From the IMG/VR virus record IMGVR_UViG_3300030329_004647, positions 124,001 through 188,000 of that record: a DNA stretch of 64,000 bases. One strand, 5' to 3'. The translations under genes were made by a program, and so were the position numbers. The notes under the pieces were generated by a model. That model was not told where the DNA came from. It searched no databases and saw only the letters and a list, made by a program, of their open reading frames with translations. Below, in pieces: positions 13,106 to 32,815 of this stretch. Numbering within the stretch: the stretch's first letter is position 1; every line of letters begins with the position of its first letter.

Positions 13106-13271
13106 TTATAGTTTCTTTTTTAGTGTTTACTGTTATTACGCAAGGTATAGTCTCAATTCGTTCCATAAATTTACCGTAGATTACTTCAAATCTCTCATGT
13201 CTACTTACTAAACTAAAGGGAACCATTGGTTCTCCATGACCATAACTTACCATGTCCCATAATTCATACAT
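13098..13271 (-). CDS. Small hypothetical protein (57 aa, not in ORF track)
   Basis: MYELWDMVSYGHGEPMVPF...KETINE*; ATG overlaps the ugd stop and the end overlaps the phoH start. Confidence 0.55.
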   Translation of the reverse strand: MYELWDMVSYGHGEPMVPFSLVSRHERFEVIYGKFMERIETIPCVITVNTKKETINE

Positions 13272-14149
13272 TATATTTCATTTTTTTCAAGGTTATTAAT
13301 TATTGCTCTACCTTCCATTTTTTCCCAATCCTTGTTAGTCCTAACCATTGTATTAGTGTTATGTGTAGCATCTAACATAGGTGTTTTTATTAAAAGTTTA
13401 TTAGCTTCATGTCTTAACGCTAATAAATCTTTAGGAAAACAATGACCACCAAACCCAAAGTCACCATCTGGCCCAGGAACATTCCAATGTGAGTAACCTA
13501 AACGTTCATCTAATTTAGCATACTCAATTACTTTATCGTAATCAACACCTAACCCTTTACAAACATTATACATTTCATTTGCAAAAGACACTTTAGTAGC
13601 TAAAAAAGTATTAGTTAGATATTTTACCATTTCTGCATATGTAGAATCTGTTTTTACTACATGTACTTTTGGAAAAGCTTTAGAAAAAATAGGTTTAACT
13701 TTAGCGGTAACCTCATTAGGACCACCTAGAATTATTCGGTTTTGATTTTTATAGTCTTCTATTGAATTCGCTTCAGTTAGAAATTCTGGATTATATACTA
13801 AAGATACTCTATTAAATCCTTTTTGTAGTTTTTTAGTAGTTCCAGGGGGTATAGTAGATTTAAGAACAATTGTTCTAGTTTCGTTTCCATAATAATCTTT
13901 AATATCACAATAGTTATTTATTTCACTTAAAACCTCTTCCACAATACCAGTATAACACTTACCCTCATTATCCATAGGTGTTGGTAGACATAAAAAAATT
14001 ATTTTACACCTCTCAACAATATCAACTAGTGTGTTAGTACTAAATTCTGGTTTGTTTAAATCAAAAGTTAATATATTAAAATATTTTTGAAGACCTTCTT
14101 TAACAGCGGTTCCTACAAAACCCTGTCCAACTATTCCTATTTTATCCAT
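13271..14149 (-). CDS. ugd: UDP-glucose/GDP-mannose 6-dehydrogenase family protein (short form)
   Basis: GQGFVG, CLPTP, KSTIPPG, NPEFL, catalytic GFGGHCFPKD; lacks C-terminal UDP-binding domain. Confidence 0.85.
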   Translation of the reverse strand: MDKIGIVGQGFVGTAVKEGLQKYFNILTFDLNKPEFSTNTLVDIVERCKIIFLCLPTPMDNEGKCYTGIVEEVLSEINNYCDIKDYYGNETRTIVLKSTIPPGTTKKLQKGFNRVSLVYNPEFLTEANSIEDYKNQNRIILGGPNEVTAKVKPIFSKAFPKVHVVKTDSTYAEMVKYLTNTFLATKVSFANEMYNVCKGLGVDYDKVIEYAKLDERLGYSHWNVPGPDGDFGFGGHCFPKDLLALRHEANKLLIKTPMLDATHNTNTMVRTNKDWEKMEGRAIINNLEKNEI

Positions 14150-15005
14150 TTTTAATTTGTTCTATATAATTTTTTAAATTTATCTTAGGTTCCCAACCCA
14201 ACTTTTTAGTGTTAGTATTATCTAATATAACAGAAGATAAACGTTCACCCCTTCTTTCAGGAACCAAAACCCAGTTATCAGTAAACATAGAAGCAACATC
14301 TGCTAATTTCCAGTTTTTACCAGTACCTAACATATATTCACTATTAAAACCTTTTTCTATTGTCATAATAATACCATTAATGATATCGTCAATATGTGTA
14401 AAGTCACGTGACTGTGTTCCTGGGGAAACCACTGTTAATGGCTCACCTTTTTTATACTGTCCCTCAAAAATTCCTATTACCGCTTTATAATCACCTTCCA
14501 TAATTTGTTTAGGACCATATACGTTGTAAAAATAAACTATTTCATATTTTAGAGAATACCATTCACCAAAATTTTTAATTAATTCTACATTTTTAGCTTT
14601 AGTCCAAGAATACGGGGATAAATTTTCATCCTTACCATCATTACCAAACTTACTACTAGATGCTGAATAAATTAATTTAACGTTATTTTTATGACAAAAA
14701 TTAACTATTTTCATAGTACCGTAACCATTAGATTTTAAAACATAATCTATATCTTTAAAAGAATTAACAATTCTAGAGTACTCACCAAAATGAAAAATTA
14801 TATCAATATCGGGTTTAACCAATTCATCAATATCCCAAGTATTTCCCTTAATATAATTTACTCGTTTGTCGTTTATGTGGTTTTTAATGTTACCAGTAAA
14901 ATAATTGTCTAAAGAAGTTATATTGATATTTTTATAACGTGATAATAATTCTTCTATAAGTGAAGACCCAATAAATCCTGCTCCACCAGTTACTAATATT
15001 TTCAT
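14142..15005 (-). CDS. NAD-dependent epimerase/dehydratase
   Basis: TGGAGFIGS, YSWTK (YxxxK), YNVYGP, RDFTHIDD. Confidence 0.85.
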   Translation of the reverse strand: MKILVTGGAGFIGSSLIEELLSRYKNINITSLDNYFTGNIKNHINDKRVNYIKGNTWDIDELVKPDIDIIFHFGEYSRIVNSFKDIDYVLKSNGYGTMKIVNFCHKNNVKLIYSASSSKFGNDGKDENLSPYSWTKAKNVELIKNFGEWYSLKYEIVYFYNVYGPKQIMEGDYKAVIGIFEGQYKKGEPLTVVSPGTQSRDFTHIDDIINGIIMTIEKGFNSEYMLGTGKNWKLADVASMFTDNWVLVPERRGERLSSVILDNTNTKKLGWEPKINLKNYIEQIKNG

Positions 15006-16166
15006 TTATTTATCTATTCTTTTTATGATATCACAAACAAATTTAATATCATCATATGTTAAATTTGGATGATTAGGTAAATATAAAGCTTTATTATCTA
15101 TAATTTCAGCATTTGGAAGTGTTAACTCACCGTAAAGTTTAGAGTAAAATGGTTGTTTGCCCATAGAACCACAAATAAGTGGTCTAACCTCTACCCCATT
15201 AGACTCCAATTCCTCAACCAACTTATTTCTATTATTAGAAACATATGGAAAAGCAAAATTAGAGACAAAATAGTCACCAGATTGTTGTGGAAAATATGAT
15301 AAGTCTCCTAATAGTTCATGGTAAATACTGTAATTTTTATGTCTTAACCTAACAGTTTCGTCTAACTTATCAAGTTGTCCTAATCCTATATAAGCTTGTA
15401 AATCAGTTGCTCTCATATTAAATCCAGGCACATAAAAAGTGTATAACCCATTAAAATTACTAACCTCCCACTCATCTCTTAATTTTTTAGTTGAGGTGTC
15501 ACACAAATCTCTATCCCAACCATGACTTCTTAACATGAGAATTAAATCATAAATTTCTTTTTCATTTGTACAAATTAATCCACCTTCAATCGTTGACATG
15601 TGATGACCAAAGTATGTTGAAAAAGTAGACATCAAGCCAAAATTTCCCAAAGTCTTGTCTTGGAATTTAGACCCTAAACTTTCACACACATCTTCTAATA
15701 GTGAAACGTTATATTTTTCACACAAACTTACTATTTTATCCATTTCAGGAACTAATCCTAAAACAGAAACTAATATAAGAGCTTTAGGACTGTCCTTTTT
15801 AAAAATCTCCTCCAAATGATTAAGGTCGACCGATAGATTTTTTAAATCTACATCACATAAAACAGGTTTCAAACCTAATTGTATTACAGGTGATAAATCT
15901 GTAGCCCAAGATAAAGAAGGGACAACCACCTTATCTCCTATGTTTAATAGTCCTTTTTGTACTAGAACATATAACATAATTAAATTTGCTGAGGAACCAG
16001 AGTTGACAAATACACAATGTTTACAACCGAGCCATTTTGCAAATAATTTTTCGAATTCAACAGTCAGTGTATTTTTAGTTAACCTAGGATAAGTTTTTAA
16101 CCATTCTATTAATCTATCAATATCTTTATTGTCGATAGTATCTTTTACTAATTCTATTTTATTCAT
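15006..16166 (-). CDS. colD: GDP-4-keto-6-deoxy-D-mannose 3-dehydratase (ColD-like, DegT/PLP family)
   Basis: VNSGSSANL, EDVCESLG, STYFGHHMSTIEGG (His in place of PLP Lys), RSHGWDRD; adjacent to fcl/gmd. Confidence 0.75.
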   Translation of the reverse strand: MNKIELVKDTIDNKDIDRLIEWLKTYPRLTKNTLTVEFEKLFAKWLGCKHCVFVNSGSSANLIMLYVLVQKGLLNIGDKVVVPSLSWATDLSPVIQLGLKPVLCDVDLKNLSVDLNHLEEIFKKDSPKALILVSVLGLVPEMDKIVSLCEKYNVSLLEDVCESLGSKFQDKTLGNFGLMSTFSTYFGHHMSTIEGGLICTNEKEIYDLILMLRSHGWDRDLCDTSTKKLRDEWEVSNFNGLYTFYVPGFNMRATDLQAYIGLGQLDKLDETVRLRHKNYSIYHELLGDLSYFPQQSGDYFVSNFAFPYVSNNRNKLVEELESNGVEVRPLICGSMGKQPFYSKLYGELTLPNAEIIDNKALYLPNHPNLTYDDIKFVCDIIKRIDK

Positions 16167-17068
16167 ACGCCTCTAAGATTTGGGTAGGTTTTTACAAAAT
16201 GTTCTATTGTTTCTTTTAAACCCACCTCTATAGGGGTAAATTTAAAGTCTGGTACGTAAGACATTAATTTTTTATTACAACTAGGTTTTCTAAATTGACC
16301 ATCTGGTTTGTCGTCTTGCCATACTACTTTACCATCAAAACCCATGTTATTCACTATCAAATCCACCAAATCTTTAATAGATATTTCGTGTGAGGTTGAA
16401 AAAATTATTGGTTCAGATTCATCGTAATTCTCTAAAGCCCAATTAGTTAACTTACCAATATCTTTTGCGTATATAAATTCTCTTAATGGTTTTCCAGAAC
16501 CCCAGACCTTAAAATCGGTATTATTTTTTTTAGCTAAATAACATTTGTGTATAAGTGACGGTATTACGTGTCCACTATCTAAATTAAAATTATCATTAAG
16601 ACCATATATGTTTGTAGGTATTACACTTACAAAATCTAACTTATACTGGTCTCTATATACTTCAGTTTGTACATCTAACATTCTTTTAGCATAGGCATAA
16701 CCATAATTAGAAGAATGGGGTGCCCCCAAGTGAATCTTTTTTTCTGTTAAAGGGTACTCCACTGAGTCGGGAAATATACAAGTAGACAGGAAAGAAACCA
16801 CTTTCTCTACTTTATATAATCTACAAGCTTCTAATACGTTAGTATTTATCATAATGTTATCATAAAAAAACTCTCCTTTAGCTTTCATATTCCCACCGAC
16901 ACCGCCAACTCTAGCAGCAGCATGAATTACGTGTGTTGGTCGATGAGTTTCAAATATCTTCTTTACATCTGACCACTTTCTTAAGTCACCATCTTTAGAC
17001 CCTAATTTTATTTCCGCGTCTATAGTTGAACCAACTAACCCACTTCCGCCTGTAATTAATCTTTTCAT
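16163..17068 (-). CDS. fcl: GDP-L-fucose synthase / GDP-colitose synthase (Fcl/ColC)
   Basis: TGGSGLVG, AARVGG, LSTCIFP, YAYAKR, PTNIYG, WGSGKPLREF; start refined to MKRLITGG. Confidence 0.88.
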   Translation of the reverse strand: MKRLITGGSGLVGSTIDAEIKLGSKDGDLRKWSDVKKIFETHRPTHVIHAAARVGGVGGNMKAKGEFFYDNIMINTNVLEACRLYKVEKVVSFLSTCIFPDSVEYPLTEKKIHLGAPHSSNYGYAYAKRMLDVQTEVYRDQYKLDFVSVIPTNIYGLNDNFNLDSGHVIPSLIHKCYLAKKNNTDFKVWGSGKPLREFIYAKDIGKLTNWALENYDESEPIIFSTSHEISIKDLVDLIVNNMGFDGKVVWQDDKPDGQFRKPSCNKKLMSYVPDFKFTPIEVGLKETIEHFVKTYPNLRGV

Positions 17069-18039
17069 TTTAATTTTTTTAACCAATCGTTTATCATGTC
17101 ATCCATCATAGTCTCAAAAGTATACTTAGGTTCCCAACCGAGTATTTTTTTAATTTTACTAGAGTCACCCTTTAAATGTTCTAACTCTTCAGGTCTATAA
17201 TATTTTTCATCAGTAACTACATAATCTCTCCAATCTAAATCCAGCTTACTAAAAACATATTCTACTAAATCTTTAACCGTATGAGACACACCCGTTGAAC
17301 ACACATAATCATCTGCTTTGTCATGTTGTAACATTAACCACATAGCTTCTACGTAGTCTTTTGCGTGACCCCAGTCTCTACTTGCATGTAAATTACCCAA
17401 ACTTAATTTATCAGTCAAACCAAGTTTTATTTTTACCGCTTCCTTAGCTACCTTTCCCGTAACAAAATTTGTGCCCCTTCTAGGTGATTCATGATTAAAA
17501 AGAATACCATTACACAAAAACATACCGTAAGAGTTACGATAATTTCTTACTAAATTATAACCATACACTTTTGCACACCCATATGGTGACACAGGATTTA
17601 ATGGGGTGGTTTCTCGTTGATACCCATCTTCATCTATGCTATTTCCAAACATTTCTGAACTACTAGCCTGATACATTTTAGACTTAGGAGATACTAATCT
17701 TATAGATTCTAGAAGATTTAAAGTTCCAGTAGCAATAGAGTGGGTGGTATATATGGGTTGGTCAAAGCTAATTCTAACATGTGATTGAGCTGCAAGATTA
17801 TATATCTCATCAGGTTCACACATCTGTAATACTCTAATTAAAGAGGCCATATCCAACATATCTGCGTATTCCAATCTTATTTTACCGTATACTTCTTTGG
17901 TTAGTCTAGCTGTTTGATTTTCAGCTACAGAATTTCTTTTTAAAATCCCCCAAACCTCATATCCTTTTTCTAATAAAAATTCTGCTAGATATGAACCATC
18001 CTGTCCATTTATTCCTGTTATTAATGCTACTTTACTCAT
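17065..18039 (-). CDS. gmd: GDP-mannose 4,6-dehydratase
   Basis: ITGINGQDGSYLAE, AAQSHVRISF, YQASSSEMFG, NHESPRRG, RDWGHAKDY. Confidence 0.96.
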   Translation of the reverse strand: MSKVALITGINGQDGSYLAEFLLEKGYEVWGILKRNSVAENQTARLTKEVYGKIRLEYADMLDMASLIRVLQMCEPDEIYNLAAQSHVRISFDQPIYTTHSIATGTLNLLESIRLVSPKSKMYQASSSEMFGNSIDEDGYQRETTPLNPVSPYGCAKVYGYNLVRNYRNSYGMFLCNGILFNHESPRRGTNFVTGKVAKEAVKIKLGLTDKLSLGNLHASRDWGHAKDYVEAMWLMLQHDKADDYVCSTGVSHTVKDLVEYVFSKLDLDWRDYVVTDEKYYRPEELEHLKGDSSKIKKILGWEPKYTFETMMDDMINDWLKKLK

Positions 18040-18041
18040 AA

Positions 18042-19115
18042 TTATTTTTTGTATTTTTCTACGTAATCACTACATAGACCCATAATATTTTTATGTTCTT
18101 TATTATCCCATTCAGGCATTACTTGGATTGAATTACTTGTCAGCTCCTTGCCTGGATATGTCCACATTACCCCTTTAGATGTGAGGGTAACATCATCTTC
18201 TTGGTGCCAAAAACAATGTATATCGTTTTCTAACATTTTATTTAAAGCTATTATATTTTTCGCATGACACCATAACTTTTCATTTTTTAAAAATTCTATT
18301 GGTATTTCGTATTGAGGGTTATCGTGGCCTAAATAAAATTTATCATTTACTACCCATACATCCACCTCAACGTCATACCCTAAGTCCAACGCTTTCTTAA
18401 CATACGATGGAGAATTTTCTAATTTTTCATTCTTACCATTTATATTGCCTCTATGAGAAATTAAAATAGTATCGTTTTTTTCTACCAAACCAAATTCCTC
18501 TAGTATTAAAGGTATTGTTTTTTGGTTTGCGTGAATATGAGCCCCATCCCAGTTATCCAACAAGTCTGGTTTGGTATACCCTTCACTATCTATCATTTTA
18601 TAAAAAATACTATAAAAAGGTATAGAGTTTTTTTCACACATCTCTTTTGCGTAGTCATTAAATTCTTTAGTAACCTCATTTCTCTCTAAACACGTACCAA
18701 AAGAAGGTCCCCCGGTATATTTTTTAGTTGGATGCCAACTTGCAATTGGACCCCAAACAGCTACCTTCATTCCCCAGTTTTTAACTTGTAGAACAGCTTC
18801 AATATATCTATCCACACATTCACGTACTATTTCTTTAACTGTTTTATTTTGTAATTCCATTTGTTTTATAAGATGAGCTCTACAATCTACTTCACCACAA
18901 CAAAACAAAATAGTATCATCAGTAGTTATACCAACCCTATTAATTACATTTTGTATTATTGATAATTTTCTTTCTAGTTGATAGGCTGTTACAGGACCTA
19001 ACCTGTATGTTCTAAACCACGGTAATCTATCGTCTGACCTTCCAGGCCATTCGGGAGTCATTAACTCTACACCCGAAAAAACAGCAGAATGACTGTCCCC
19101 AATACAATGTATCAT
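18042..19115 (-). CDS. Fusion: SGNH-hydrolase-like domain + GDPD/PLC-like phosphodiesterase domain
   Basis: N-terminal IGDSHS, GEVDCR, DGAHIH; C-terminal ISHRGN...YDVEVDVW...LGHD...WCHAKN. Confidence 0.6.
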   Translation of the reverse strand: MIHCIGDSHSAVFSGVELMTPEWPGRSDDRLPWFRTYRLGPVTAYQLERKLSIIQNVINRVGITTDDTILFCCGEVDCRAHLIKQMELQNKTVKEIVRECVDRYIEAVLQVKNWGMKVAVWGPIASWHPTKKYTGGPSFGTCLERNEVTKEFNDYAKEMCEKNSIPFYSIFYKMIDSEGYTKPDLLDNWDGAHIHANQKTIPLILEEFGLVEKNDTILISHRGNINGKNEKLENSPSYVKKALDLGYDVEVDVWVVNDKFYLGHDNPQYEIPIEFLKNEKLWCHAKNIIALNKMLENDIHCFWHQEDDVTLTSKGVMWTYPGKELTSNSIQVMPEWDNKEHKNIMGLCSDYVEKYKK

Positions 19116-21213: not shown

Positions 21214-22193
21214 TCTATTAATTTTTTTATATGAGCTTTAATTTTTTCTTTAATGGTACCTTCCACTTCTCCAAGCTCACTTTTTAATGATAAAAATTTA
21301 TTATCAGATAGTACATAATGACCACATATTTCTACCAAAGTTTTTTTATTATCTTGAGGAATGAAATCTTCATTTACCCACTTTCTCCACCTATTAGATT
21401 CTAGACAAATTTCAAAAAATATTTCTTTTTGTTCTTCGTTCATTAATGAGTATAAAATAGTAGATTCTAACCGACCAAGTTCAGGAGCTATATTAATAGC
21501 GTCTAAACCATTTTGAAATCTAGATTGAAAATCTTTTTGAGATATATAATCCCCGTTATGTTCTTTGGATAGTAAATTAAATTTTTTTACTAAAGTAACC
21601 ATAGATAATAATTTATTCACATCATAAGTTCCTGTATTATGTGTTTCCTTTAATCCTGTTCCTGACTGTATAACACAAAATTTAATTTTAGAAAAAATAT
21701 TATCGGTTAGTTCTTTTTTAACCCTGGTCAACATATATGATATATCATCTAAAGAAAATGGACGTATACCCTCCTCGGTTCCTATCTCAAATAATATATT
21801 AGGATTTTGTTGGTGACAAAATTTAATTAAGTCTATAGTTTTATCTACCCCCTCCTTTATGTCTTTTATTTTTACCCAAGGGTCTATATGTATTAAATCT
21901 AAATATTTACAATCGTGGTTTAAAGAGTTATAACCATCGTCATCTTTATATCCTTGTCCAGGCCCTGCATGGTCCCGTTGCACTTCTATAAGATTAGTTT
22001 TAGATTTAATATAAGACATAAACTTTTCGGTTGTCCAGTTATTAACATAACCGCCGTCAAATTCTACCTGTCTTCTAGAAGGTATGAGTGTTATAATAGT
22101 TTGTAGTTCATTAGCTAATTCTATAGTGGAGTCCACTATATTTTTACTCATAGGTCCTACGTAAAGTTTTGCTGTTGTTGTATTGTTTTCCAT
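21201..22193 (-). CDS. TIM-barrel sugar(-phosphate) epimerase/aldolase-like (GatZ/KbaZ/UxaE-like)
   Basis: SRRQVEFDGGY, RDHAGPG, IHIDP, EIGTEE, KEHNGDY, INIAPELG. Confidence 0.55.
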   Translation of the reverse strand: MENNTTTAKLYVGPMSKNIVDSTIELANELQTIITLIPSRRQVEFDGGYVNNWTTEKFMSYIKSKTNLIEVQRDHAGPGQGYKDDDGYNSLNHDCKYLDLIHIDPWVKIKDIKEGVDKTIDLIKFCHQQNPNILFEIGTEEGIRPFSLDDISYMLTRVKKELTDNIFSKIKFCVIQSGTGLKETHNTGTYDVNKLLSMVTLVKKFNLLSKEHNGDYISQKDFQSRFQNGLDAINIAPELGRLESTILYSLMNEEQKEIFFEICLESNRWRKWVNEDFIPQDNKKTLVEICGHYVLSDNKFLSLKSELGEVEGTIKEKIKAHIKKLIEWTI

Positions 22194-23752
22194 AGATTGT
22201 ATTTTCCAAAGTAGTATAAGAATAAATCAAATGGATGATGATGTAAAGGAGACATGTTTAACCATATTATAGAAGTTAATATTTTTACCTTATCCAGGCT
22301 TAAATTTTTATCTAAAATAAATTGATGTAGTGTTTTTTCACACATAGATAATAAATGTCTACGATTTATATCACAATATATTTTGTCATCACCAATTTCT
22401 ATATTGAATAAATTATCATTAATAATATCATGATTAACAATTAAATTATGATTAAGTTTAGCTAAATCATAATGTATATCCCCTAATTTTAACTCTCCAC
22501 CAAAATCCTGCCTCCAATCTATTAAAGAAAAAGAACCATCCGATTTTTCTATAATATTCTCTAATATAAAATCTCCGTGAAAATAATTAGGTGAATTAAC
22601 ATTAGTTAGAATGTTTTTAACTAGTGATAGTTGGTATTTTACTGGTGGTATATACTCATCATTTATTATTTCTTCTTTATCTACTATATGTTGTTTTTTA
22701 ATTAAAGAATCTAATCGACTAATAGTTTTTTTAATGTAAAAATCTTCACAAATGTCTCTAAATTCATTTACTGATGGATAAATAACATTTTTATCCACAC
22801 CCTTAGACCATAGGTTAATATCAGTCCAGTTTAGTAAATCACTAAAACTTTTAGGTGTGACAGAACGTGAAAATAACTCACCCTCTACTAATTCGTATTT
22901 ATAGAAATTTTTAGTGCTGTCTATAATTTTAGGTACCGAATCCCCAAGAATAGAAGCTCTATCGACTCTTTTTTTAACAATATCTTTATTGTGGAAAAAT
23001 TTTATAACTTTATTATCTAAAATATAAATGGATTCATCTAACTTATCTAAAACATTTATTTCATTATTAATTACTTTTCTTGCTTTATTTAATGAAGATA
23101 CATTTCCTATGTCTTGCCATTTATGACATTCTTCTAAAACAAAACTATTTTTTTTCATCATTTTACTGTAGACATCACAATCAGATATGGAGTCATTAAC
23201 TCTATCCGTGTACACCTCATATAAACAAGACCAAAAATTTACATAGTCATTAATCCCAGCTACACCAACAAATTCATAATCATAGTTAAGTTCTCCTTTT
23301 TCATTAATTCTAGATATCTTAGAACCAGAAACATTTAATGTTCTATATTGAGAACTATTAATTTTTTTATGGCCAACAAGATAGTTTTTATTTGGGGTTA
23401 TATTTTGATAGTCTAAAATAGTATCACAAGCATGAAAAATAAAAGGACATTGTAAGTGATTTTTGGTTTGAAGCATCGAGTAAACCAAACTACTTCCTTT
23501 TCCAGAAAATACGTCAACCCACACAAATTGAAATTTTCTATCTGGGTATGCTAATTCTAAAAATTCTTTAACATGGTCACCAAAATGACCAAGGGTTATA
23601 ACAAACTCTACAGTTTTAGGGTAAGATTCTATTATATAAGATATAGCAGGTTTAGGACCGATTCTTACTAGAGATTTATTGGTAAAATTTGTTATTTCAC
23701 CTAATCTAGACCCCAATCCTGATGTTGTCAGTAATACCTTATACTCTTCCAT
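22157..23752 (-). CDS. Fusion: sugar nucleotidyltransferase + APH/choline-kinase-like domain
   Basis: N-terminal SGLGSRLG...NKSLVRIG.KP, WQDIGN; C-terminal HGDFILENII...LIDWR...YDLAKL. Confidence 0.7.
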   Translation of the reverse strand: MEEYKVLLTTSGLGSRLGEITNFTNKSLVRIGPKPAISYIIESYPKTVEFVITLGHFGDHVKEFLELAYPDRKFQFVWVDVFSGKGSSLVYSMLQTKNHLQCPFIFHACDTILDYQNITPNKNYLVGHKKINSSQYRTLNVSGSKISRINEKGELNYDYEFVGVAGINDYVNFWSCLYEVYTDRVNDSISDCDVYSKMMKKNSFVLEECHKWQDIGNVSSLNKARKVINNEINVLDKLDESIYILDNKVIKFFHNKDIVKKRVDRASILGDSVPKIIDSTKNFYKYELVEGELFSRSVTPKSFSDLLNWTDINLWSKGVDKNVIYPSVNEFRDICEDFYIKKTISRLDSLIKKQHIVDKEEIINDEYIPPVKYQLSLVKNILTNVNSPNYFHGDFILENIIEKSDGSFSLIDWRQDFGGELKLGDIHYDLAKLNHNLIVNHDIINDNLFNIEIGDDKIYCDINRRHLLSMCEKTLHQFILDKNLSLDKVKILTSIIWLNMSPLHHHPFDLFLYYFGKYNLWKTIQQQQNFT

Positions 23753-24086
23753 AATTATCCTCTAATCGTACGATATCGTCCTCCCCAAAATACTCACCCC
23801 ATTGAACCTCAATGAAAATCATATCATTACTACTATTATTAATAGGTCTATGCTTATCACCAACAGGAACTAAAATAGTACTACCGACAGTGACCTCAAT
23901 AACTTCATCATTAAGAATAACTTGTCCCGAACCCTGTACTACTGTCCACACTTCATTTCTTTTGTGGTGATATTGGTAACTTGGGGCACCGCCAGGTTTA
24001 ATAACTATTCTTTTAACTTTACAATAATCACAATCTAATAAATTTTCAAAAGTACCCCACGGTCTTTCTTCATTGTAGTTTTTCAT
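23739..24086 (-). CDS. Mannose-6-phosphate isomerase type II cupin (standalone)
   Basis: ERPWG, KVKRIVIKPG, SYQYHHKRNEVW, IEVQWGEYFGEDDIVRLEDNYGR. Confidence 0.88.
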   Translation of the reverse strand: MKNYNEERPWGTFENLLDCDYCKVKRIVIKPGGAPSYQYHHKRNEVWTVVQGSGQVILNDEVIEVTVGSTILVPVGDKHRPINNSSNDMIFIEVQWGEYFGEDDIVRLEDNYGRV

Positions 24087-24452: not shown

Positions 24453-25808
24453 TTATAATTTTTTTGAAATTTTATTTATAACAGTGTCTATGTAATCGAA
24501 TACTTCTTCAGTGTAGTGTGGAGAAGCCCCAACAAAAAACACTCTATCTAAAACAATATTTGCTTTAGGGTAGTCTTTATAATCACCTAGGTGTTTATAT
24601 CCAGGGTGTAGAAGTATATTACCAGCAAAGTAATTTCTAGTCTGTATTTTATTATCTTCTAACTCCTTCACAATTATTCTTTTTTGTTCAGCACTTTCAC
24701 AAATAAAAGGAGTACCGAACCAAGAGGTTTCGGCTTTTTCTAATTCTATAGGAACCCTTAATGAAGGAATATTTTTTTGAAAAATTTCGGTTATTCTATT
24801 TTTACTAATAATTCTACGTTCATGTATTTCATCAAATTTATCTAGTTGAACTAGACCTATAGCTCCTTGCATGTCTAAAGGTTTTAGATTATAACCCACA
24901 TTAGTGAATACGTATTTATGGTCAACAATTCCATCGTAATCTTCTAACCAAGGACTAAATCTTTTTCCACAAGTACCACAACCCAGAAGATTAGCTGAAC
25001 CTACACAATAACAATCTCTCCCCCACCAAGCAAAACTTCTAGCTAACTCTATAATTTTTGGATTTGCTGACGAAACCATCCCGCCTTCACCAGTGGTAAT
25101 GTGGTGAGCTGGATAAAATGAACATGATGAAGCGATAGAGTAGTCTGTAAGGTACTTACCGTCCCACTTACTACCCAGACTATCGCAATTATCCATAATT
25201 AATTGTATGTTATGTTTTTTAGCTATTTCATTTAACTTATCAAAATCTGGTGAGTTACCTAGTACAGGAGATATGAATATAGCTTTAGTTTTTTCGGTCA
25301 CTAAATCTTCTATTAAATCCACATCAAAGTTAAGAGTGTCTAATTCTATATCTACAAAAATAGGTGTTAAATTATTTTGTACTAAAGGAGCTAGAGTAGT
25401 CGGAAATCCTACCACTGAAATTAAAACCTCATCACCATCATTCCAACCAAAGTATTTTTTAAGAGCGGCTATTAATACAAGATTTGCAGAACTTCCAGAA
25501 TTAACCATAGTAGATTTTTGAAAATTAAAAATTCTAGAAAACATCGTTTCAAATCTATGTACGTTTGCACCTGTTGCTAACCACTTACCATATAAAAAAG
25601 CTTCCATAGCTGCAACCACTTCCCGTGTGTTCCAGTACGGTCCAGAATAGTATATAGGGGTTTTTCCTGGTTCAAATTTTTGATTTACATTATAGGCATA
25701 TTTTAAAATAGGATTTTCTTCATTTAACTCAGCTACAATCTCCTCTATATGTTCTACTTTATTTTTCTTTTTAGTAAGTCCTAATATTTTTTTAAGTTTT
25801 TTTATCAT
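24453..25808 (-). CDS. rfbH: NDP-4-keto-6-deoxyglucose 3-dehydratase (RfbH/DdhC E1-like)
   Basis: VNSGSSANL, DNCDSLGS, SFYPAHHITTGEGG, WGRDCYC...CGTCGKRF Fe-S motif, DHKYVF, TRNYFAGN. Confidence 0.85.
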   Translation of the reverse strand: MIKKLKKILGLTKKKNKVEHIEEIVAELNEENPILKYAYNVNQKFEPGKTPIYYSGPYWNTREVVAAMEAFLYGKWLATGANVHRFETMFSRIFNFQKSTMVNSGSSANLVLIAALKKYFGWNDGDEVLISVVGFPTTLAPLVQNNLTPIFVDIELDTLNFDVDLIEDLVTEKTKAIFISPVLGNSPDFDKLNEIAKKHNIQLIMDNCDSLGSKWDGKYLTDYSIASSCSFYPAHHITTGEGGMVSSANPKIIELARSFAWWGRDCYCVGSANLLGCGTCGKRFSPWLEDYDGIVDHKYVFTNVGYNLKPLDMQGAIGLVQLDKFDEIHERRIISKNRITEIFQKNIPSLRVPIELEKAETSWFGTPFICESAEQKRIIVKELEDNKIQTRNYFAGNILLHPGYKHLGDYKDYPKANIVLDRVFFVGASPHYTEEVFDYIDTVINKISKKL

Positions 25809-26549: not shown

Positions 26550-26850
26550 TTTTTACACAAGGTGTTTTTACCACAACTGTGGTAACATGAGTTAAACATT
26601 TAAAGTCCGTACTTTCACCTGGTTTTATTACTATTATATCATCCGCCGAATATTCCACCCCATTCATCTCGACCACACCATCAACTATTACAGTAAATTC
26701 CGTAGCCACCTTATGAGTGTGTCTTTTTTCTACAGCACCCTCTAAATACCTTTTAACTGCCACCTCAAAGTCTTGAGTTTTATAAAGGCTAGGTTCAAAG
26801 TCACCCACAAACCAACCCTTAATCATTTCATTTAAATTATGTTTTTCCAT
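26530..26850 (-). CDS. Cupin-fold protein
   Basis: GWFVGDFEPS, HTHKVATEFTVIVDG, VVKTP...DKY. Confidence 0.75.
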   Translation of the reverse strand: MEKHNLNEMIKGWFVGDFEPSLYKTQDFEVAVKRYLEGAVEKRHTHKVATEFTVIVDGVVEMNGVEYSADDIIVIKPGESTDFKCLTHVTTVVVKTPCVKNDKYEE

Positions 26851-28217
26851 TAGTATTTATGATTTTCTAAAAATTTATTTAAATCTTCTGGTGTTCCTAA
26901 TCCCCACATTTTTTTAGTGTGAAACGTCTTTATTTTTTTACCATCCTCTATAGCTTCATTATATATTGGACAAACATAAAATTCATTGTTTATTCTTAAG
27001 TCTTTTTCAATCATTTGTTCACCATATCTTACATAATCAGAACCCTTTGACCAATAGTATATACCCACCGTAGCGATATTACTTATTGGCTTTTTTTCTG
27101 CAACTTCAGATACATACCCATCATTATCTAGTTTAGCAAAACTCCATTTTGGATGAGTTGCGGTAAAAGATAAAATACCACCATCAATTTCATCTGCCAT
27201 CATAGAGTACATAAACTCATTAGAATCCCACTCCACAAACTGGTCAGAGTTTGCTATTAATAAAGGTTCATCATTATTTATAAATTCTTTAGCTAATAAA
27301 GTTGTACATGCTGCACCTTCTGTTACCCCATCAACCTGAACTATTTCACAACCAGGTGTAATAAGGTTTAGTAAGTGTTTTAAGTTATACTTTTCATAGT
27401 GTGATTTTTGAACAATGTATATGTGACGTGCATCAATATTTAAATTTTCAGTCACTACTTGAATCATAGGTTTATTATTAACTTCTATCAGTGGTTTAGG
27501 GAAAGTATACCCAGCTTTTTCAAATCTAGAACCTGCTCCTGCCATAGGGATTAAAACATTCATTTTTCCACCTTGCCACTTAGGTATAATAGCACCGTTA
27601 TTATGTTTGTCTAAATGTTCATTAATTTTTTCGTATGTAACATCTTCACAGTCTTTAACCGCACATAAATGACCTCCACTTTCTACCGCTCCCTTTCTAC
27701 CGTGATGAGAATCCTCAATAATAAGAGTTTGTTTTGGTGACACACCAAAATGTAACATACATTTCATGTACATTTCAGGATGTGGTTTAGGTTTAATAAC
27801 ATCTTGATTCGTGTATAGAACATCTATGTGTTCCATAAACCCTTTTCTAATTAGTTGTAATTTTGCTGTTTCTCTAATTGAATTAGTACAACAAGCTATC
27901 TGATATCCTGAATCTTTTAATCTTCTTAGAATGTCTTTAATTCTAAAATCTTGTGAAAATTTATCTATAATAGATACGGTTTTTTCTTGTTTAAGTTTCC
28001 ATACTATGTTATGAACATCCTTTGATAGTCCTTTTGAGGATGTTAACATTTCTAATTTTTTTGTGGTAGATAACCCATCATATGTAGATAGGTGTTCATC
28101 TCTGGAAATGATAAACTTTTCATCTATGGTTTCTAAAGCTTTATTTAAAGCTTCGTAATGTAATTCTCTAGCGTTTACTAAAACACCATCTAAGTCAAAT
28201 ATAATTAATTTAATCAT
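26850..28217 (-). CDS. Fusion: HAD phosphatase + nucleotidyltransferase
   Basis: FDLDGVL, KPHPEMY, IEDS; then IPMAGAGSRF...PKPLIEV, NSDQ, AEKKPIS, GLGTPEDL. Confidence 0.8.
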   Translation of the reverse strand: MIKLIIFDLDGVLVNARELHYEALNKALETIDEKFIISRDEHLSTYDGLSTTKKLEMLTSSKGLSKDVHNIVWKLKQEKTVSIIDKFSQDFRIKDILRRLKDSGYQIACCTNSIRETAKLQLIRKGFMEHIDVLYTNQDVIKPKPHPEMYMKCMLHFGVSPKQTLIIEDSHHGRKGAVESGGHLCAVKDCEDVTYEKINEHLDKHNNGAIIPKWQGGKMNVLIPMAGAGSRFEKAGYTFPKPLIEVNNKPMIQVVTENLNIDARHIYIVQKSHYEKYNLKHLLNLITPGCEIVQVDGVTEGAACTTLLAKEFINNDEPLLIANSDQFVEWDSNEFMYSMMADEIDGGILSFTATHPKWSFAKLDNDGYVSEVAEKKPISNIATVGIYYWSKGSDYVRYGEQMIEKDLRINNEFYVCPIYNEAIEDGKKIKTFHTKKMWGLGTPEDLNKFLENHKY

Positions 28218-28279: not shown

Positions 28280-29197
28280 TTAAATGTTTTGAATGATGTT
28301 CTCAAACAAGTTAATAAGATAATCTAAGTTAATAACATTAGACTGTTTATTGCTAACTATTGGTTCCTTAAAATAACTTTGATATAGCTTATCGTCAGAG
28401 TCTATTTCTAATATTTTTTCTATTAATTCTTCATCACTTTCAAAATCAAAATAATTTAAAAAGCTATTAGGGTTATATTCTTCGTGTATCCTATCATTTC
28501 CCCAGTAAATCGGGATAACACCAGATATAAATGGTTCTATAAATTTTTCACTAATCATACCATTCATACTTACCATTTCTCCATTCTCAATTACCGCGTT
28601 AGGGTAAGAAGGATATGTAGCTCTAAAGTTATTCTCAAAAGCAATATTAAATTTATAATCTTTTATAAAATTTATTTTTGGTAAGGAGGAGTTTAAAGAA
28701 GTATTATCAAAAGGAATGGAAAAGTCTTTGAATGGGTGAACATTAGTTTCTACTTTTTTTACATTATTTAATTTATGAAAAAAACGACCTCTTTTACCGT
28801 GTAAACTTCTACTTACATAAGAACAAAATTTTGTTTTTGGTGGTATAGGTCTATTTTCTTGGGTAAAAAAACTAAAATCCTTTATTAATCCATTTTTTAT
28901 AAATTCATAAACATATTGATAGTAGGCTGGAAATCTTGTGTAATTAGGATAATCTAAAAAAAATCCACCTAAAAAATGGTCAGCAATTTCTGGTGTGGGT
29001 ACTGGAAAATAAGGTTCCCCACCATTAAAATAAATGGTATACACATCAGGAAATGGTCGGTCATTTAAAGAAATTACTAAATTAGGGTTTGAGTCGACCA
29101 CAGTAACATTATGATTTTGACTTAATATCCACACAAAAAAATTATCCTGCTTATTAAAACCACCCCAAAATTCATGAAAATATAATCTAATATCCAT
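28280..29197 (-). CDS. GT10 alpha-1,3/4-fucosyltransferase-like
   Basis: KTKFCSYV, KINFIKDYKFNIAFEN, ISEKF, IPIYWG. Confidence 0.82.
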   Translation of the reverse strand: MDIRLYFHEFWGGFNKQDNFFVWILSQNHNVTVVDSNPNLVISLNDRPFPDVYTIYFNGGEPYFPVPTPEIADHFLGGFFLDYPNYTRFPAYYQYVYEFIKNGLIKDFSFFTQENRPIPPKTKFCSYVSRSLHGKRGRFFHKLNNVKKVETNVHPFKDFSIPFDNTSLNSSLPKINFIKDYKFNIAFENNFRATYPSYPNAVIENGEMVSMNGMISEKFIEPFISGVIPIYWGNDRIHEEYNPNSFLNYFDFESDEELIEKILEIDSDDKLYQSYFKEPIVSNKQSNVINLDYLINLFENIIQNI

Positions 29198-29198
29198 T

Positions 29199-29927
29199 TT
29201 ATTTATCTGTATTTTCTTTAGTAGTTCTAAGGTCTATTTCATATGCGGTACAATCTATATTTTCTTGTCTAGTTAATCTAGGAACAATAGCATAACAAGT
29301 TTCATTTTTTTGTTTAACTACTTCACTAAAAGCTCCGTCTGCTGTGTAATATCCTTCTTTATTAAATTCAGCCATTGTTTTAGCAAAGGATTTTGTTATA
29401 CCAATACTGTGAGTACAGTGTAAGTGAATAAAATTATCTTTTGTTACTTTACATATATTAGAAGAGTGGTTTGGTTGCGGATACATATTTCCGTCCCACC
29501 CTAGGTATACCATGCCCCAGTCATTAGGAAGTTGTGACATGTAATCTTCTACATTTTCAAATTCTGGAAAAAAGATACAATCGTCCTCCAATATTAATAC
29601 CTTCTCCCAATCACCATTAGCTATTTTTTCATACATTTTAACATGGGACAAAGAACATCCTATTTGTCCAAAAGATAGATTTTGTGGCATTACCCTAACT
29701 ATACCATTCGTGTCTGTATGTAAATTAGTAAAACCAGCTTTAGAACCATCTATACCATAAAACAACTCATAATCTAATCCATCCAACCTATCTTTTATTC
29801 TTTGTATTCTTGATTTAGCAGTTGGTGCTAAATTAGCATTAGCCACAAAATCAGATTCATTAAAATCATGTTCTAGTGTTAACACTAAAACTTTATCGAA
29901 TAATTTATTTAATATACTTAAATCCAT
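29199..29927 (-). CDS. GT25 glycosyltransferase
   Basis: GIDG, GQIGCSLSH, LILEDD, DWGMVYLG. Confidence 0.82.
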   Translation of the reverse strand: MDLSILNKLFDKVLVLTLEHDFNESDFVANANLAPTAKSRIQRIKDRLDGLDYELFYGIDGSKAGFTNLHTDTNGIVRVMPQNLSFGQIGCSLSHVKMYEKIANGDWEKVLILEDDCIFFPEFENVEDYMSQLPNDWGMVYLGWDGNMYPQPNHSSNICKVTKDNFIHLHCTHSIGITKSFAKTMAEFNKEGYYTADGAFSEVVKQKNETCYAIVPRLTRQENIDCTAYEIDLRTTKENTDK

Positions 29928-30595
29928 GTTTTTATATAGTTTTTAGTTTCATCACTCATTTCATTAAAAGCTCTATCTTTAAATTTTAAAAGTGAAACTG
30001 AGGATTCAGGGTTCATATAGAATGTGTATTTTTCCCTAACTTGTTTGGACCAAACAACATCTTCGGATTCTCCCCACATTCTATTTTCATCTAAAGGAAA
30101 TTCTTTCATTATATGTTTTTTACATACCCAGTAAGCTCCTGAAATATACATCCACTTAGTAAACTCAGTAAAGTCATAAGGAAGAAGAAATTCTTTATTT
30201 TTCACACCTAAAGGTTCCACATCAAAAGCCCATAAAGTCCAATCTCTATATCGACTACCATCTCTATTTAAAATTTTAGTCATACAAACATCAAAATCGT
30301 TTCCAAATTTTAAAAAGCCATCATACCAATTCTTAGATAAAAATACATAATCGTGTAAGTAAACAATGTTATCAAACTTAGCTTCATTAGTGATGATATT
30401 CTTTTTTTTAGTAATCCACATTGGTCTTTGAGTCTCATCAAATGGAATAACCCGAGTATTTTCCGCTTTAACATTACTATTACCAACTACAATAATTTCA
30501 AAATTAGGGATATTTTGTGATAATATAGAATTTATAACTATTTCTACAAAATCATCCGAAGAACCGTTTGTTATTATTCCAAAAGTAAAATCCAT
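29918..30595 (-). CDS. GT2-like glycosyltransferase
   Basis: FTFGIIT, KKKN, VYLHDY, WGESEDVVWS. Confidence 0.65.
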   Translation of the reverse strand: MDFTFGIITNGSSDDFVEIVINSILSQNIPNFEIIVVGNSNVKAENTRVIPFDETQRPMWITKKKNIITNEAKFDNIVYLHDYVFLSKNWYDGFLKFGNDFDVCMTKILNRDGSRYRDWTLWAFDVEPLGVKNKEFLLPYDFTEFTKWMYISGAYWVCKKHIMKEFPLDENRMWGESEDVVWSKQVREKYTFYMNPESSVSLLKFKDRAFNEMSDETKNYIKTWI

Positions 30596-30597
30596 AA

Positions 30598-31410
30598 TTA
30601 AAAGTAGTTTGTGTAGTTTTTAAAAATCCAATCTTCAGCGAGAATAAATTCCTTTGATTTATCTAAATTATTCTTAATAGCTTCCATTCTATTAATATAA
30701 TCTTCTTCTGTTAAATTATCTAAAATATTTTTTAACTCTTCCACAGTTTCAAAAAATATTATTCCATTTTCGTCAAAAAAGTTTTTAACAGAGTGGGTTC
30801 CCCAATATATTGGTATGGTTCCAGTAGCGAAACAATCTATTATTTTTTCCGTAAAATAATCATCATACTTTATATTTTCTACTACTACTGAAAATCTGTA
30901 TTTAGACAACCCATCTATTTTGAACTCTAAATCATTAATTCCTCTTCCATAAACATCTATATTATTACCCATTTCTTTAATAATAGAATGCCTTAATTTG
31001 TGACCAGTAGTTGTTTGTTTATTTGAAGCTATGATAGAACATAGAGAAGACTTAGGCCATATTTTTATATCTTTATCGTCAATCCAACACCCAGCGTGAG
31101 GATACCATTTAAATTTTTCAGGGTCACTTTCTATTAGTTCTTGGGAATAGGTAAATATTACATCATATCTATCTTTGACAGTTTTAACCGACTCATACCC
31201 TCTTGGATTTATAGATGGAGGTTCTATCAACCAACCTATATTTTTTTTGTATGGTGAACTTAATACGTGTGTAATTAAGTAGTCAGTAAAAAAACAAATT
31301 TCGGATTCATAATCTTCCCTAATCCACTCAAAGTAAGAGGGTTTTCTTCCATGACAAGAAGATTCACCATGAGCGAAACACATGTCTTTTATTAGTATTT
31401 TTTTATTCAT
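30598..31410 (-). CDS. GT10-like glycosyltransferase
   Basis: YRFSVVVEN, YFTEKIIDCFATGTIPIYWG. Confidence 0.75.
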   Translation of the reverse strand: MNKKILIKDMCFAHGESSCHGRKPSYFEWIREDYESEICFFTDYLITHVLSSPYKKNIGWLIEPPSINPRGYESVKTVKDRYDVIFTYSQELIESDPEKFKWYPHAGCWIDDKDIKIWPKSSLCSIIASNKQTTTGHKLRHSIIKEMGNNIDVYGRGINDLEFKIDGLSKYRFSVVVENIKYDDYFTEKIIDCFATGTIPIYWGTHSVKNFFDENGIIFFETVEELKNILDNLTEEDYINRMEAIKNNLDKSKEFILAEDWIFKNYTNYF

Positions 31411-32204
31411 TTTAAAATAAATTTAATTTCTTGATGAGGACCATTAACGTCAGTAAAATCCATATTAACAAAATCTAGTCTTTTTCCATTAATATATTCC
31501 CTCACTAATTCTTTTTCACTGTAACTTATTTTTTTACCATAAGGATTGTTAAAAACGTCGTTAACTTTATTAACAGGAATACTAACCAACTTACTCTCTT
31601 CGAATGAATGCATAAATCTTTCACCAATTATAGGTAAAAAATGCTGTAAATTAGCTTCTAGTGTGTTGGGTGATGTAAAGGGACACCTTTCTAATATTTT
31701 TAGTATAAATTCTTTTTTAAATATATGGCCATCAACAGATAGTGGATAGGCAAAATCAACTTCATTTTCATCCCATCTCCATTTTAAAACACCATTGTTA
31801 TTACTTACATTTTTAGTTTCATAACTTTTAGAAGCGGGATGAGAATAGTTACAATTTAATCCTAGTCTTAGGGAAAAACAGGCTGCGTCATCATCTATAT
31901 TAATTTTATTAAACTGAAGTGTTTTAAAAATAACACTATCATCTGTCATGAAAGAAAATAACTTAAATTTTTGTTTTCTAACAAACGATAATACTTGATT
32001 GTAAAAATCCTCTTCTTCTATATTAAAATTAACATCTGGATGTTCTTTTATGAGTGTCTTGTACGCGGATTCATAATGAGGTGCTGTTGTTTTATATATA
32101 ATATTTATGTTAAAAAAATTGGGCATATTAAGATATATAGAGTTTAACAACCCATCTAATTGTAATGGTCTATTTTTAGAAAATATAACTAATTCACACC
32201 TCAT
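31407..32204 (-). CDS. GT-A-like putative glycosyltransferase
   Basis: IFSKNRPLQL, FMTDD, FSLRLG, YPLSVDGHIF. Confidence 0.5.
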   Translation of the reverse strand: MRCELVIFSKNRPLQLDGLLNSIYLNMPNFFNINIIYKTTAPHYESAYKTLIKEHPDVNFNIEEEDFYNQVLSFVRKQKFKLFSFMTDDSVIFKTLQFNKINIDDDAACFSLRLGLNCNYSHPASKSYETKNVSNNNGVLKWRWDENEVDFAYPLSVDGHIFKKEFILKILERCPFTSPNTLEANLQHFLPIIGERFMHSFEESKLVSIPVNKVNDVFNNPYGKKISYSEKELVREYINGKRLDFVNMDFTDVNGPHQEIKFILK

Positions 32205-32815
32205 TTTAATAAATTATCATAGTTTACAACTCTTCCTTGTATATCTGAATAACCTTCTCTTTGAAAAGCAATAGAGGGGTTAGTACAATATACATTAAAA
32301 CTTTTTTGAATCATTGTATAGTAGTTATCTACTTGTTTTTTATGTTTAGGTAATATGCTTTCTATTACGTCATACACCGTTGATTTTACAGCGACACAAT
32401 GAATCGCTACTGTATAGTGTAATTTTAATGTTGTCTCATTTATAACTTGGGGTGGTGAACCGTATCTATGATTACCACCAAAATAAATCATATCCCAATC
32501 ATCGGGAATGTTATTCATAAATTTATCTAAATTTTTTAATTCAGGCCCAAAAACCACATCATCCTCCAACATTAGATAATGGGGTAAATTATTTTCTTTA
32601 GCGTGACGCACTAAAGATAAGTTACTCTCCAATATACCTAATTCTCCTGGGAGTATAAATTTAGGTTTTTCTAACTTACTACCATCTACAGCTGAAAATC
32701 GTTCAACATCTTTTAATCCCACTCTATCAAACTCTGAACAAGCTTCTTCCCACCTATCCTTTCTTTGGTCCAAATTAATACAAAATATGTCTTTAAAATA
32801 TTTGTTAAAACTCAT
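32201..32815 (-). CDS. GT25 glycosyltransferase
   Basis: CINLDQRKDRW, RFSAVDG, GELG, MLEDD, DWDMIYFG, QREGYSDI. Confidence 0.85.
   Translation of the reverse strand: MSFNKYFKDIFCINLDQRKDRWEEACSEFDRVGLKDVERFSAVDGSKLEKPKFILPGELGILESNLSLVRHAKENNLPHYLMLEDDVVFGPELKNLDKFMNNIPDDWDMIYFGGNHRYGSPPQVINETTLKLHYTVAIHCVAVKSTVYDVIESILPKHKKQVDNYYTMIQKSFNVYCTNPSIAFQREGYSDIQGRVVNYDNLLK

What the first reader, a model, noticed from the sequence alone, without database searches (positions are those of the whole stretch)
15006..18039. Complete Gmd-ColD-Fcl/ColC set: phage GDP-colitose (or fucose) pathway with two GT10 transferases
Seen: adjacent gmd, fcl-like and a PLP enzyme with His replacing the Schiff-base Lys (GHHMST), plus GT10-like genes at 28280 and 30598. 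Known: Gmd, ColD and ColC make GDP-L-colitose; GT10 enzymes use GDP-fucose. Inference: the phage makes a 3,6-dideoxyhexose and its GT10s may be colitosyltransferases.
Basis: partly seen in the sequence, partly recalled or inferred. Interest (0 to 1): 0.62.

Follow-up and report, generated by a model that had tools for sequence, protein, structure and literature searches.

The report
Phage GDP-fucose/colitose sugar gene cassette
A large marine tailed phage carries a tightly coupled gmd–fcl–colD operon that should turn GDP-mannose into GDP-fucose and very probably the rare 3,6-dideoxy sugar colitose; the same cassette sits unrecognised in cultured cyanophages and many viral contigs, so it is a sound new example, not a new kind of system.

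Summary
On the minus strand, gmd (17065-18039), an Fcl-family epimerase/reductase (16163-17068) and a ColD-type PLP enzyme (15006-16166) are joined by ATGA overlaps. The PLP enzyme has His where aminotransferases have the Schiff-base Lys. Two GT10-like genes lie at 28280 and 30598. The host record is a 232-kb tailed phage.

The PLP enzyme is best matched by solved E. coli ColD. It lacks the Fe-S cysteine motif of E1, and the His is invariant in 163 of 163 relatives. It is therefore a 3-dehydratase, not a perosamine-type transaminase.

The Fcl-like gene is not a dedicated ColC. It sits in a viral Fcl clade that mostly occurs without ColD. In ColD-bearing viral loci this Fcl type and ColC-like genes never co-occur (0 of 64 lineages, p = 7e-4), and the record holds no other Fcl/ColC gene. 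The most likely reading is one enzyme making both GDP-fucose and GDP-colitose.

GT10 donor use stays open. GT10b clusters with ColD loci and GT10a with fucose-only loci, but weakly.

The cultured cyanophages ACG-2014f and S-CAM7, and at least 91 IMG/VR contigs, carry the same kind of cassette. I rate it a new member of a known kind, of moderate interest.

The parts
17065..18039 (-). [quoted passage not shown]
   Evidence: PF16363 403 bits and TIGR01472 402.5 bits, cutoff 415. 51% identical to E. coli Gmd with catalytic motifs kept. Its stop overlaps the fcl ATG as ATGA.
16163..17068 (-). Fcl-family GDP-4-keto-6-deoxymannose epimerase/reductase (about 301 aa from ATG 17068; the ORF lister starts it at TTG 17086). 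Proposed to act both as Fcl and as ColC.
   Evidence: Best solved matches are GDP-L-fucose synthases at 302 bits; E. coli Fcl scores 143 bits. NF047922 213 bits, below the 500 cutoff. Ser/Cys/Tyr/Lys/His catalytic set kept. Lies in a 96% SH-aLRT viral Fcl clade, 24 of 30 rows without ColD nearby. 29% identical to E. coli O55 ColC.
15006..16166 (-). ColD-type GDP-4-keto-6-deoxy-D-mannose 3-dehydratase (386 aa, P0001)
   Evidence: PF01041 242 bits. Best solved match ColD 2gms, E = 2e-67, with His188 aligned. No CxC...C Fe-S insertion, unlike the E1-like ORF. His188 invariant in 163/163 relatives. Gmd lies within 6 kb in 52 of 80 viral loci.
14142..15005 (-). Extended SDR (287 aa), GalE / UDP-GlcA epimerase-decarboxylase-like, directly after colD. 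Alternative candidate reductase.
   Evidence: PF01370 127 bits. Best solved matches are UDP-hexose 4-epimerases, UXS and UDP-GlcA 4-epimerase. 50-56% homologues follow Gmd in L051, L056 and L092.
13271..14149 (-). Short UDP-glucose/GDP-mannose dehydrogenase-like protein (292 aa). It lacks the start of the NAD domain and the whole C-terminal domain.
   Evidence: TIGR03026 206 bits, covering profile positions 65-296 of 413 only. Homologues of the same short length occur in other viral and Marinimicrobia loci.
18042..19115 (-). Unknown 357-aa protein just upstream of gmd. N-terminal GDSL/SGNH-like part; the C-terminal part has an HRG...E.D motif that I recall from memory as typical of glycerophosphodiester phosphodiesterases.
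   Evidence: Only a weak Pfam hit, Lipase_GDSL_2 at E = 0.023. Motifs read from the translation. Homologues of the N-terminal part lie near the Gmd-Fcl pair (within 5 kb) in 15 of 80 Fcl-fetched viral loci.
28280..29197 (-). GT10-like glycosyltransferase 'GT10a' (305 aa)
   Evidence: PF00852 49.4 bits, cutoff 23.9. H. pylori alpha-1,3-FucT 2nzw E = 1e-8 over the donor motif. Groups (98% SH-aLRT) with two ColD-less Gmd-Fcl loci.
30598..31410 (-). GT10-like glycosyltransferase 'GT10b' (270 aa), the better colitosyltransferase candidate
   Evidence: PF00852 45.2 bits. 2nzw E = 1e-9, with the EN...Y.TEK...IPIYWG motif. Lies in a 95% SH-aLRT clade where 6 of 7 rows come from ColD loci and 3 abut ColD.
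24453..25808 (-). Second 3-dehydratase, E1/RfbH/SpnQ type (451 aa)
   Evidence: NF011936 RfbH 368 bits, cutoff 423. Solved E1 3bcx E = 2e-79, with the His-His motif and the CYC...C..C cluster region aligned.
34454..35449 (-). dTDP-glucose 4,6-dehydratase (RmlB-like, 331 aa), the likely feeder of the E1-type enzyme
   Evidence: TIGR01181 416 bits, above the 365 cutoff. E1-like and this SDR type are adjacent in L080, L089 and L166.
26850..28217 (-). Fusion of a HAD (beta-phosphoglucomutase-like) domain and a sugar-1-phosphate nucleotidyltransferase (455 aa)
   Evidence: PF13419 105 bits plus PF00483 48 bits. Solved matches.
22157..24086 (-). Two genes. A 531-aa protein with an N-terminal nucleotidyltransferase-like part (22157-23752), and a 115-aa cupin like the C-terminus of ManC/PMI (23739-24086). 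Together a possible GDP-mannose supply.
   Evidence: TIGR03992 36 bits and PF00483 20.5 bits, both weak. PF01050 92.5 bits and TIGR01479 positions 361-467.
29199..34464 (-). Further glycosyltransferases around GT10b: GT25 (29199-29927 and 32201-32815), a GT2_5+GT4 fusion (32812-34464), and two unassigned ORFs
   Evidence: Pfam hits.

Best explanation
The finding is the GDP-mannose branch of a roughly 25-kb glycan-synthesis island (about 10.4-38.3 kb of the window) in a marine jumbo tailed phage.

Proposed route:
1. Gmd converts GDP-mannose to GDP-4-keto-6-deoxy-D-mannose.
2. The pathway then forks. The Fcl-family enzyme epimerises and reduces this intermediate to GDP-L-fucose.
3. In the other fork, the ColD-type PMP/PLP enzyme removes the 3-hydroxyl, using His188 as acid/base and glutamate to recharge the cofactor. 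The product is GDP-4-keto-3,6-dideoxy-D-mannose.
4. The same Fcl-family enzyme, acting as ColC does (C5 epimerisation and C4 reduction), converts that to GDP-L-colitose.
5. The two GDP-sugars are donors for the GT10-like transferases. GT10b is the better colitose candidate and GT10a the better fucose candidate.
6. These transferases decorate a cytoplasmic acceptor, either a virion protein or a host envelope precursor. The record encodes no Wzx/Wzy-like export machinery.

Shown here: gene identities, catalytic residues, operon coupling and context statistics. Inferred: the substrate of the ColD-type enzyme, the dual use of Fcl, the donor-transferase pairing and the acceptor.
For: - Family and solved-structure matches for all three enzymes.
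- His188 aligned to ColD His188 and invariant in 163/163 relatives.
- No Fe-S cysteine insertion, in contrast with the E1-like ORF of the same phage. The review PMC8987622 gives exactly these features as separating ColD from aminotransferases and from E1/SpnQ.
- ATGA overlaps at gmd/fcl and fcl/colD.
- Gmd within 6 kb of ColD in 52 of 80 viral loci.
- The Fcl catalytic set is intact.
- The whole 232-kb record has only four SDR 'Epimerase' genes, all in the window, and no other Fcl/ColC-type gene.
- In ColD-bearing viral loci, window-type Fcl and other (ColC-like) Fcl-family genes are mutually exclusive. The counts are 0 both, 8 window-type only, 36 other only and 20 neither, over 64 de-duplicated lineages. 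Fisher p = 7e-4.
- Bona fide E. coli O55 ColC itself groups with bacterial Fcl (97% SH-aLRT). The Fcl-to-ColC switch is therefore evolutionarily easy.
- The same gmd-fcl-colD(His) order, with an E. coli-Fcl-like Fcl, occurs in cultured cyanophages ACG-2014f and S-CAM7.
- GT10b-type genes abut ColD in L044, L045 and L067.
- No protein with 6 or more predicted membrane spans exists in the record.
Against: - No enzyme assay exists for any member of this ColD clade. It is only 35% identical to E. coli ColD.
- The Fcl-like protein belongs to a clade in which 24 of 30 rows have no ColD within 5 kb, and it is only 29% identical to E. coli ColC. Its use of the 3-deoxy substrate is purely contextual.
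- An extra SDR (14142-15005) directly follows colD and could be the real reductase.
- 28 of 103 ColD loci have no Fcl-family gene in the flank, so other reductases may serve ColD.
- The GT10/ColD association is not significant on the tree: 64 of 500 shuffles were as clustered. In the Fcl-fetched loci, all 11 GT10 hits were in ColD-less loci.
- The tree is a quick search with SH-aLRT support only.
- Flanks of 5-6 kb cannot show that a gene is absent from a genome.
Confidence: 0.55

Rival explanations
1. Fcl makes only GDP-L-fucose. The product of the ColD-type enzyme is reduced by the adjacent extended SDR (14142-15005) without C5 epimerisation. That would give a GDP-linked D-configured 3,6-dideoxyhexose (3,6-dideoxy-D-mannose, i.e. 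tyvelose configuration, or its C4 epimer) rather than colitose.
For: - The SDR starts one base after the colD stop.
- Related SDRs sit where ColC normally sits, directly upstream of ColD, in L018-L021 at about 33% identity. At 50-56% identity they follow Gmd in L051, L056 and L092.
- The window Fcl belongs to a mostly ColD-less clade.
Against: - The SDR resembles UDP-hexose or UDP-GlcA 4-epimerases and decarboxylases.
- It overlaps a UDP-glucose dehydrogenase-like gene by 8 bases, which suggests a separate UDP-sugar module.
- In L051, L056 and L092 it co-occurs with a ColC-like gene, so it does not replace one.
- The mutual exclusivity of window-type Fcl and ColC-like genes argues that Fcl fills the ColC role.
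Confidence: 0.17
2. The DegT-family enzyme at 15006 is a 4-aminotransferase (perosamine type). Alternatively it is inactive, and the cassette makes only GDP-fucose, perhaps with a GDP-4-amino sugar.
For: - It hits Pfam DegT_DnrJ_EryC1 and, more weakly, perosamine synthetases at 140 bits.
- Public annotations of the cyanophage homologues read 'aminotransferase'.
Against: - The Schiff-base Lys is replaced by His in this protein and in all 163 relatives.
- ColD is the best solved match by 70-90 bits.
- The review PMC8987622 reports that ColD and E1 show no transaminase activity with the native His.
Confidence: 0.05
3. The ColD-type enzyme works on a non-GDP substrate, for example the dTDP- or CDP-4-keto-6-deoxyglucose made by the RmlB-like enzyme of the same island. 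The gmd-fcl pair is then a plain fucose module.
For: - The island holds an RmlB-like dehydratase.
- JGI and GenBank name close relatives 'CDP-6-deoxy-D-xylo-4-hexulose-3-dehydrase'.
- Bacterial loci of this clade rarely show a Gmd within 6 kb: 5 of 56.
Against: - Translational coupling to gmd-fcl.
- Gmd lies nearby in 52 of 80 viral loci.
- The island already has a dedicated E1-type Fe-S dehydratase. In other viral loci that enzyme is the one adjacent to RmlB-like genes (L080, L089, L166).
- The automatic names come from family-level transfer, not from assays.
Confidence: 0.08

Closest known systems
Bacterial GDP-L-colitose pathway (ManB/ManC, Gmd, ColD=ColA, ColC=ColB) of E. coli O55/O111, Yersinia pseudotuberculosis O:6/7/10, Salmonella and Vibrio cholerae (PMC8987622, PMC5399914, PMC7685785)
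   Same: - Gmd plus a His-type PLP 3-dehydratase without an Fe-S cluster plus an Fcl-family epimerase/reductase.
- The reductase gene overlaps the start of colD by 4 bases, exactly as colC-colD do in E. coli O55:H7 CB9615.
- A fucosyltransferase-like GT is present in the cluster.
   Different: - It is carried by a phage.
- The ColD-type protein is only 35% identical to E. coli ColD.
- The reductase is 29% identical to E. coli ColC and belongs to a viral Fcl clade that usually lacks ColD.
- The GTs are GT10-like, whereas O55 has a gene annotated as an alpha-1,2-fucosyltransferase.
- There is no wzx or wzy.
gmd-fcl-colD cassettes of cultured cyanomyoviruses Synechococcus phage ACG-2014f (Atlauavirus) and S-CAM7 (Mazuvirus)
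   Same: - Same gene order, and a His-His motif in the DegT enzyme.
- An Fcl of canonical type rather than ColC type.
- Followed by glycosyltransferases.
   Different: - The proteins are only 35-52% identical to the window's.
- Their Gmd and Fcl are E. coli-like (62-64% and 48-49% identical).
- They are annotated only as 'nucleotide-sugar epimerase' and 'aminotransferase'.
- They sit in T4-like cyanophages. The window's PolB has only distant relatives, about 23% identical, among sequenced phages.
Gmd + Fcl fucose modules of cyanophages (e.g. S-SCSM1, PMC9602691) and of many IMG/VR contigs
   Same: - The window's Gmd-Fcl pair belongs to this widespread viral pair. Gmd lies next to window-type Fcl in 77 of 80 loci.
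- It is often accompanied by fucosyltransferase-like genes.
   Different: The window adds ColD. Only 23 of 80 window-type Fcl loci have it within 5 kb.
E1/E3 (CDP-ascarylose, abequose) and SpnQ 3-deoxygenation systems
   Same: The second DegT gene (24453-25808) has the His-His motif and the cysteine cluster region of E1.
   Different: - This is not the enzyme of the finding.
- The record has no E3-type reductase or ferredoxin. It would have to borrow host reductases, as SpnQ does (PMC8987622).

Membership tests
ColD (GDP-4-keto-6-deoxy-D-mannose 3-dehydratase) | Fold-type I aspartate-aminotransferase-like (DegT) protein | tested here: met
   PF01041 242 bits over residues 12-381.
ColD (GDP-4-keto-6-deoxy-D-mannose 3-dehydratase) | Catalytic His in place of the Schiff-base Lys | tested here: met
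   His188 aligns with ColD His188. It is invariant in 163/163 relatives. The criterion comes from PMC8987622.
ColD (GDP-4-keto-6-deoxy-D-mannose 3-dehydratase) | No [2Fe-2S] cysteine motif (this separates ColD from E1 and SpnQ) | tested here: met
   In alignment A1 the CYC...C..C insertion is present in the E1-like ORF and absent here. The criterion comes from PMC8987622.
ColD (GDP-4-keto-6-deoxy-D-mannose 3-dehydratase) | Closer to characterised ColD than to other sugar PLP enzymes | tested here: met
   ColD 231 bits, E1 160 bits, perosamine synthetase 140 bits. Global identity to E. coli ColD is only 35%.
ColD (GDP-4-keto-6-deoxy-D-mannose 3-dehydratase) | GDP-sugar substrate supplied by Gmd | tested here: inconclusive
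   The context supports it: ATGA-coupled operon and Gmd nearby in 52 of 80 viral loci. GDP-binding residues could not be checked, because the structural papers are not held.
ColD (GDP-4-keto-6-deoxy-D-mannose 3-dehydratase) | 3-deoxygenation activity | not testable with these tools
   Needs an enzyme assay.
ColC (GDP-L-colitose synthase) | Fcl/GMER-family SDR with the Ser-Cys-Tyr-Lys-His catalytic residues | tested here: met
   All five residues are kept in the window protein, in E. coli Fcl and in E. coli ColC.
ColC (GDP-L-colitose synthase) | Gene adjacent to colD | tested here: met
   4-base overlap with colD, as in E. coli O55.
ColC (GDP-L-colitose synthase) | Orthology with characterised ColC, or membership of a clade found only next to ColD | tested here: not met
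   29% identical to E. coli ColC. It lies in a viral Fcl clade where 24 of 30 rows have no ColD nearby. Other clades are 100% ColD-adjacent. It lacks the PCNLYG-x-YDK signature shared by E. coli ColC and the viral ColC-like clade.
ColC (GDP-L-colitose synthase) | Converts GDP-4-keto-3,6-dideoxymannose to GDP-L-colitose | not testable with these tools
   Indirect support only: mutual exclusivity with ColC-like genes, and no other Fcl-family gene in the record.
Fcl (GDP-L-fucose synthase) | Passes the NCBIfam equivalog model NF047922 | tested here: not met
   213 bits against a cutoff of 500. That model is built on bacterial Fcl.
Fcl (GDP-L-fucose synthase) | Close similarity to characterised GDP-fucose synthases, and pairing with Gmd | tested here: met
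   Eukaryote-type GDP-L-fucose synthase structures, 296-302 bits (E = 4e-89 to 4e-87); the 4e5y alignment is shown. Gmd is adjacent in 77 of 80 loci of this clade.
[quoted passage not shown] | Passes family models and keeps the catalytic motifs | tested here: met
   PF16363 403 bits against a cutoff of 27. TIGR01472 402.5 bits, just under its 415 cutoff. 51% identical to E. coli Gmd, with the S/T-x-E and YxxxK motifs kept.
GT10 (alpha-1,3/4-fucosyltransferases) | C-terminal GDP-sugar-binding domain with the conserved motif | tested here: met
   PF00852 49.4 and 45.2 bits, cutoff 23.9. H. pylori FucT 2nzw E = 1e-8 and 1e-9 over that motif.
GT10 (alpha-1,3/4-fucosyltransferases) | Full-length similarity, including the N-terminal acceptor domain | tested here: inconclusive
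   Only about 65-120 residues match. The N-terminal halves have no significant match.
GT10 (alpha-1,3/4-fucosyltransferases) | Donor specificity (GDP-fucose versus GDP-colitose) | not testable with these tools
   The context hints are weak. GT10b lies with ColD loci and GT10a with ColD-less loci, but 64 of 500 shuffles were as clustered.

The most novel reading that the evidence does not exclude
Marine phages, including cultured cyanophages, commonly make GDP-L-colitose by adding a ColD-type dehydratase to an ordinary Gmd-Fcl pair, and the canonical Fcl doubles as colitose synthase. A phage-specific GT10 clade (GT10b type) is a colitosyltransferase that places this 3,6-dideoxy sugar on the virion or on the infected cell's surface. 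This phage additionally runs a second, E1/SpnQ-type Fe-S 3-deoxygenation route, so it would make two different dideoxy sugars during infection.
Probability: 0.3. Interest if true: 0.6.

Novelty: new member of a known kind. Interest (0 to 1): 0.45.

Why it matters
3,6-Dideoxyhexoses are rare, strongly antigenic sugars known from bacterial O-antigens. Phage-encoded synthesis would extend the known phage 'LPS/glycan' auxiliary genes from fucose and rhamnose to dideoxy sugars. It would also mean that phages can repaint either themselves or the infected cell with a sugar that changes receptor recognition, superinfection, grazing or immune recognition.

The full-text searches run here found no paper describing a phage-encoded colitose pathway. 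Yet the cassette sits in cultured Synechococcus phages under generic names. The question is therefore directly testable in the laboratory.

The data also suggest that a canonical Fcl can stand in for ColC, which is of practical use for making GDP-colitose enzymatically.

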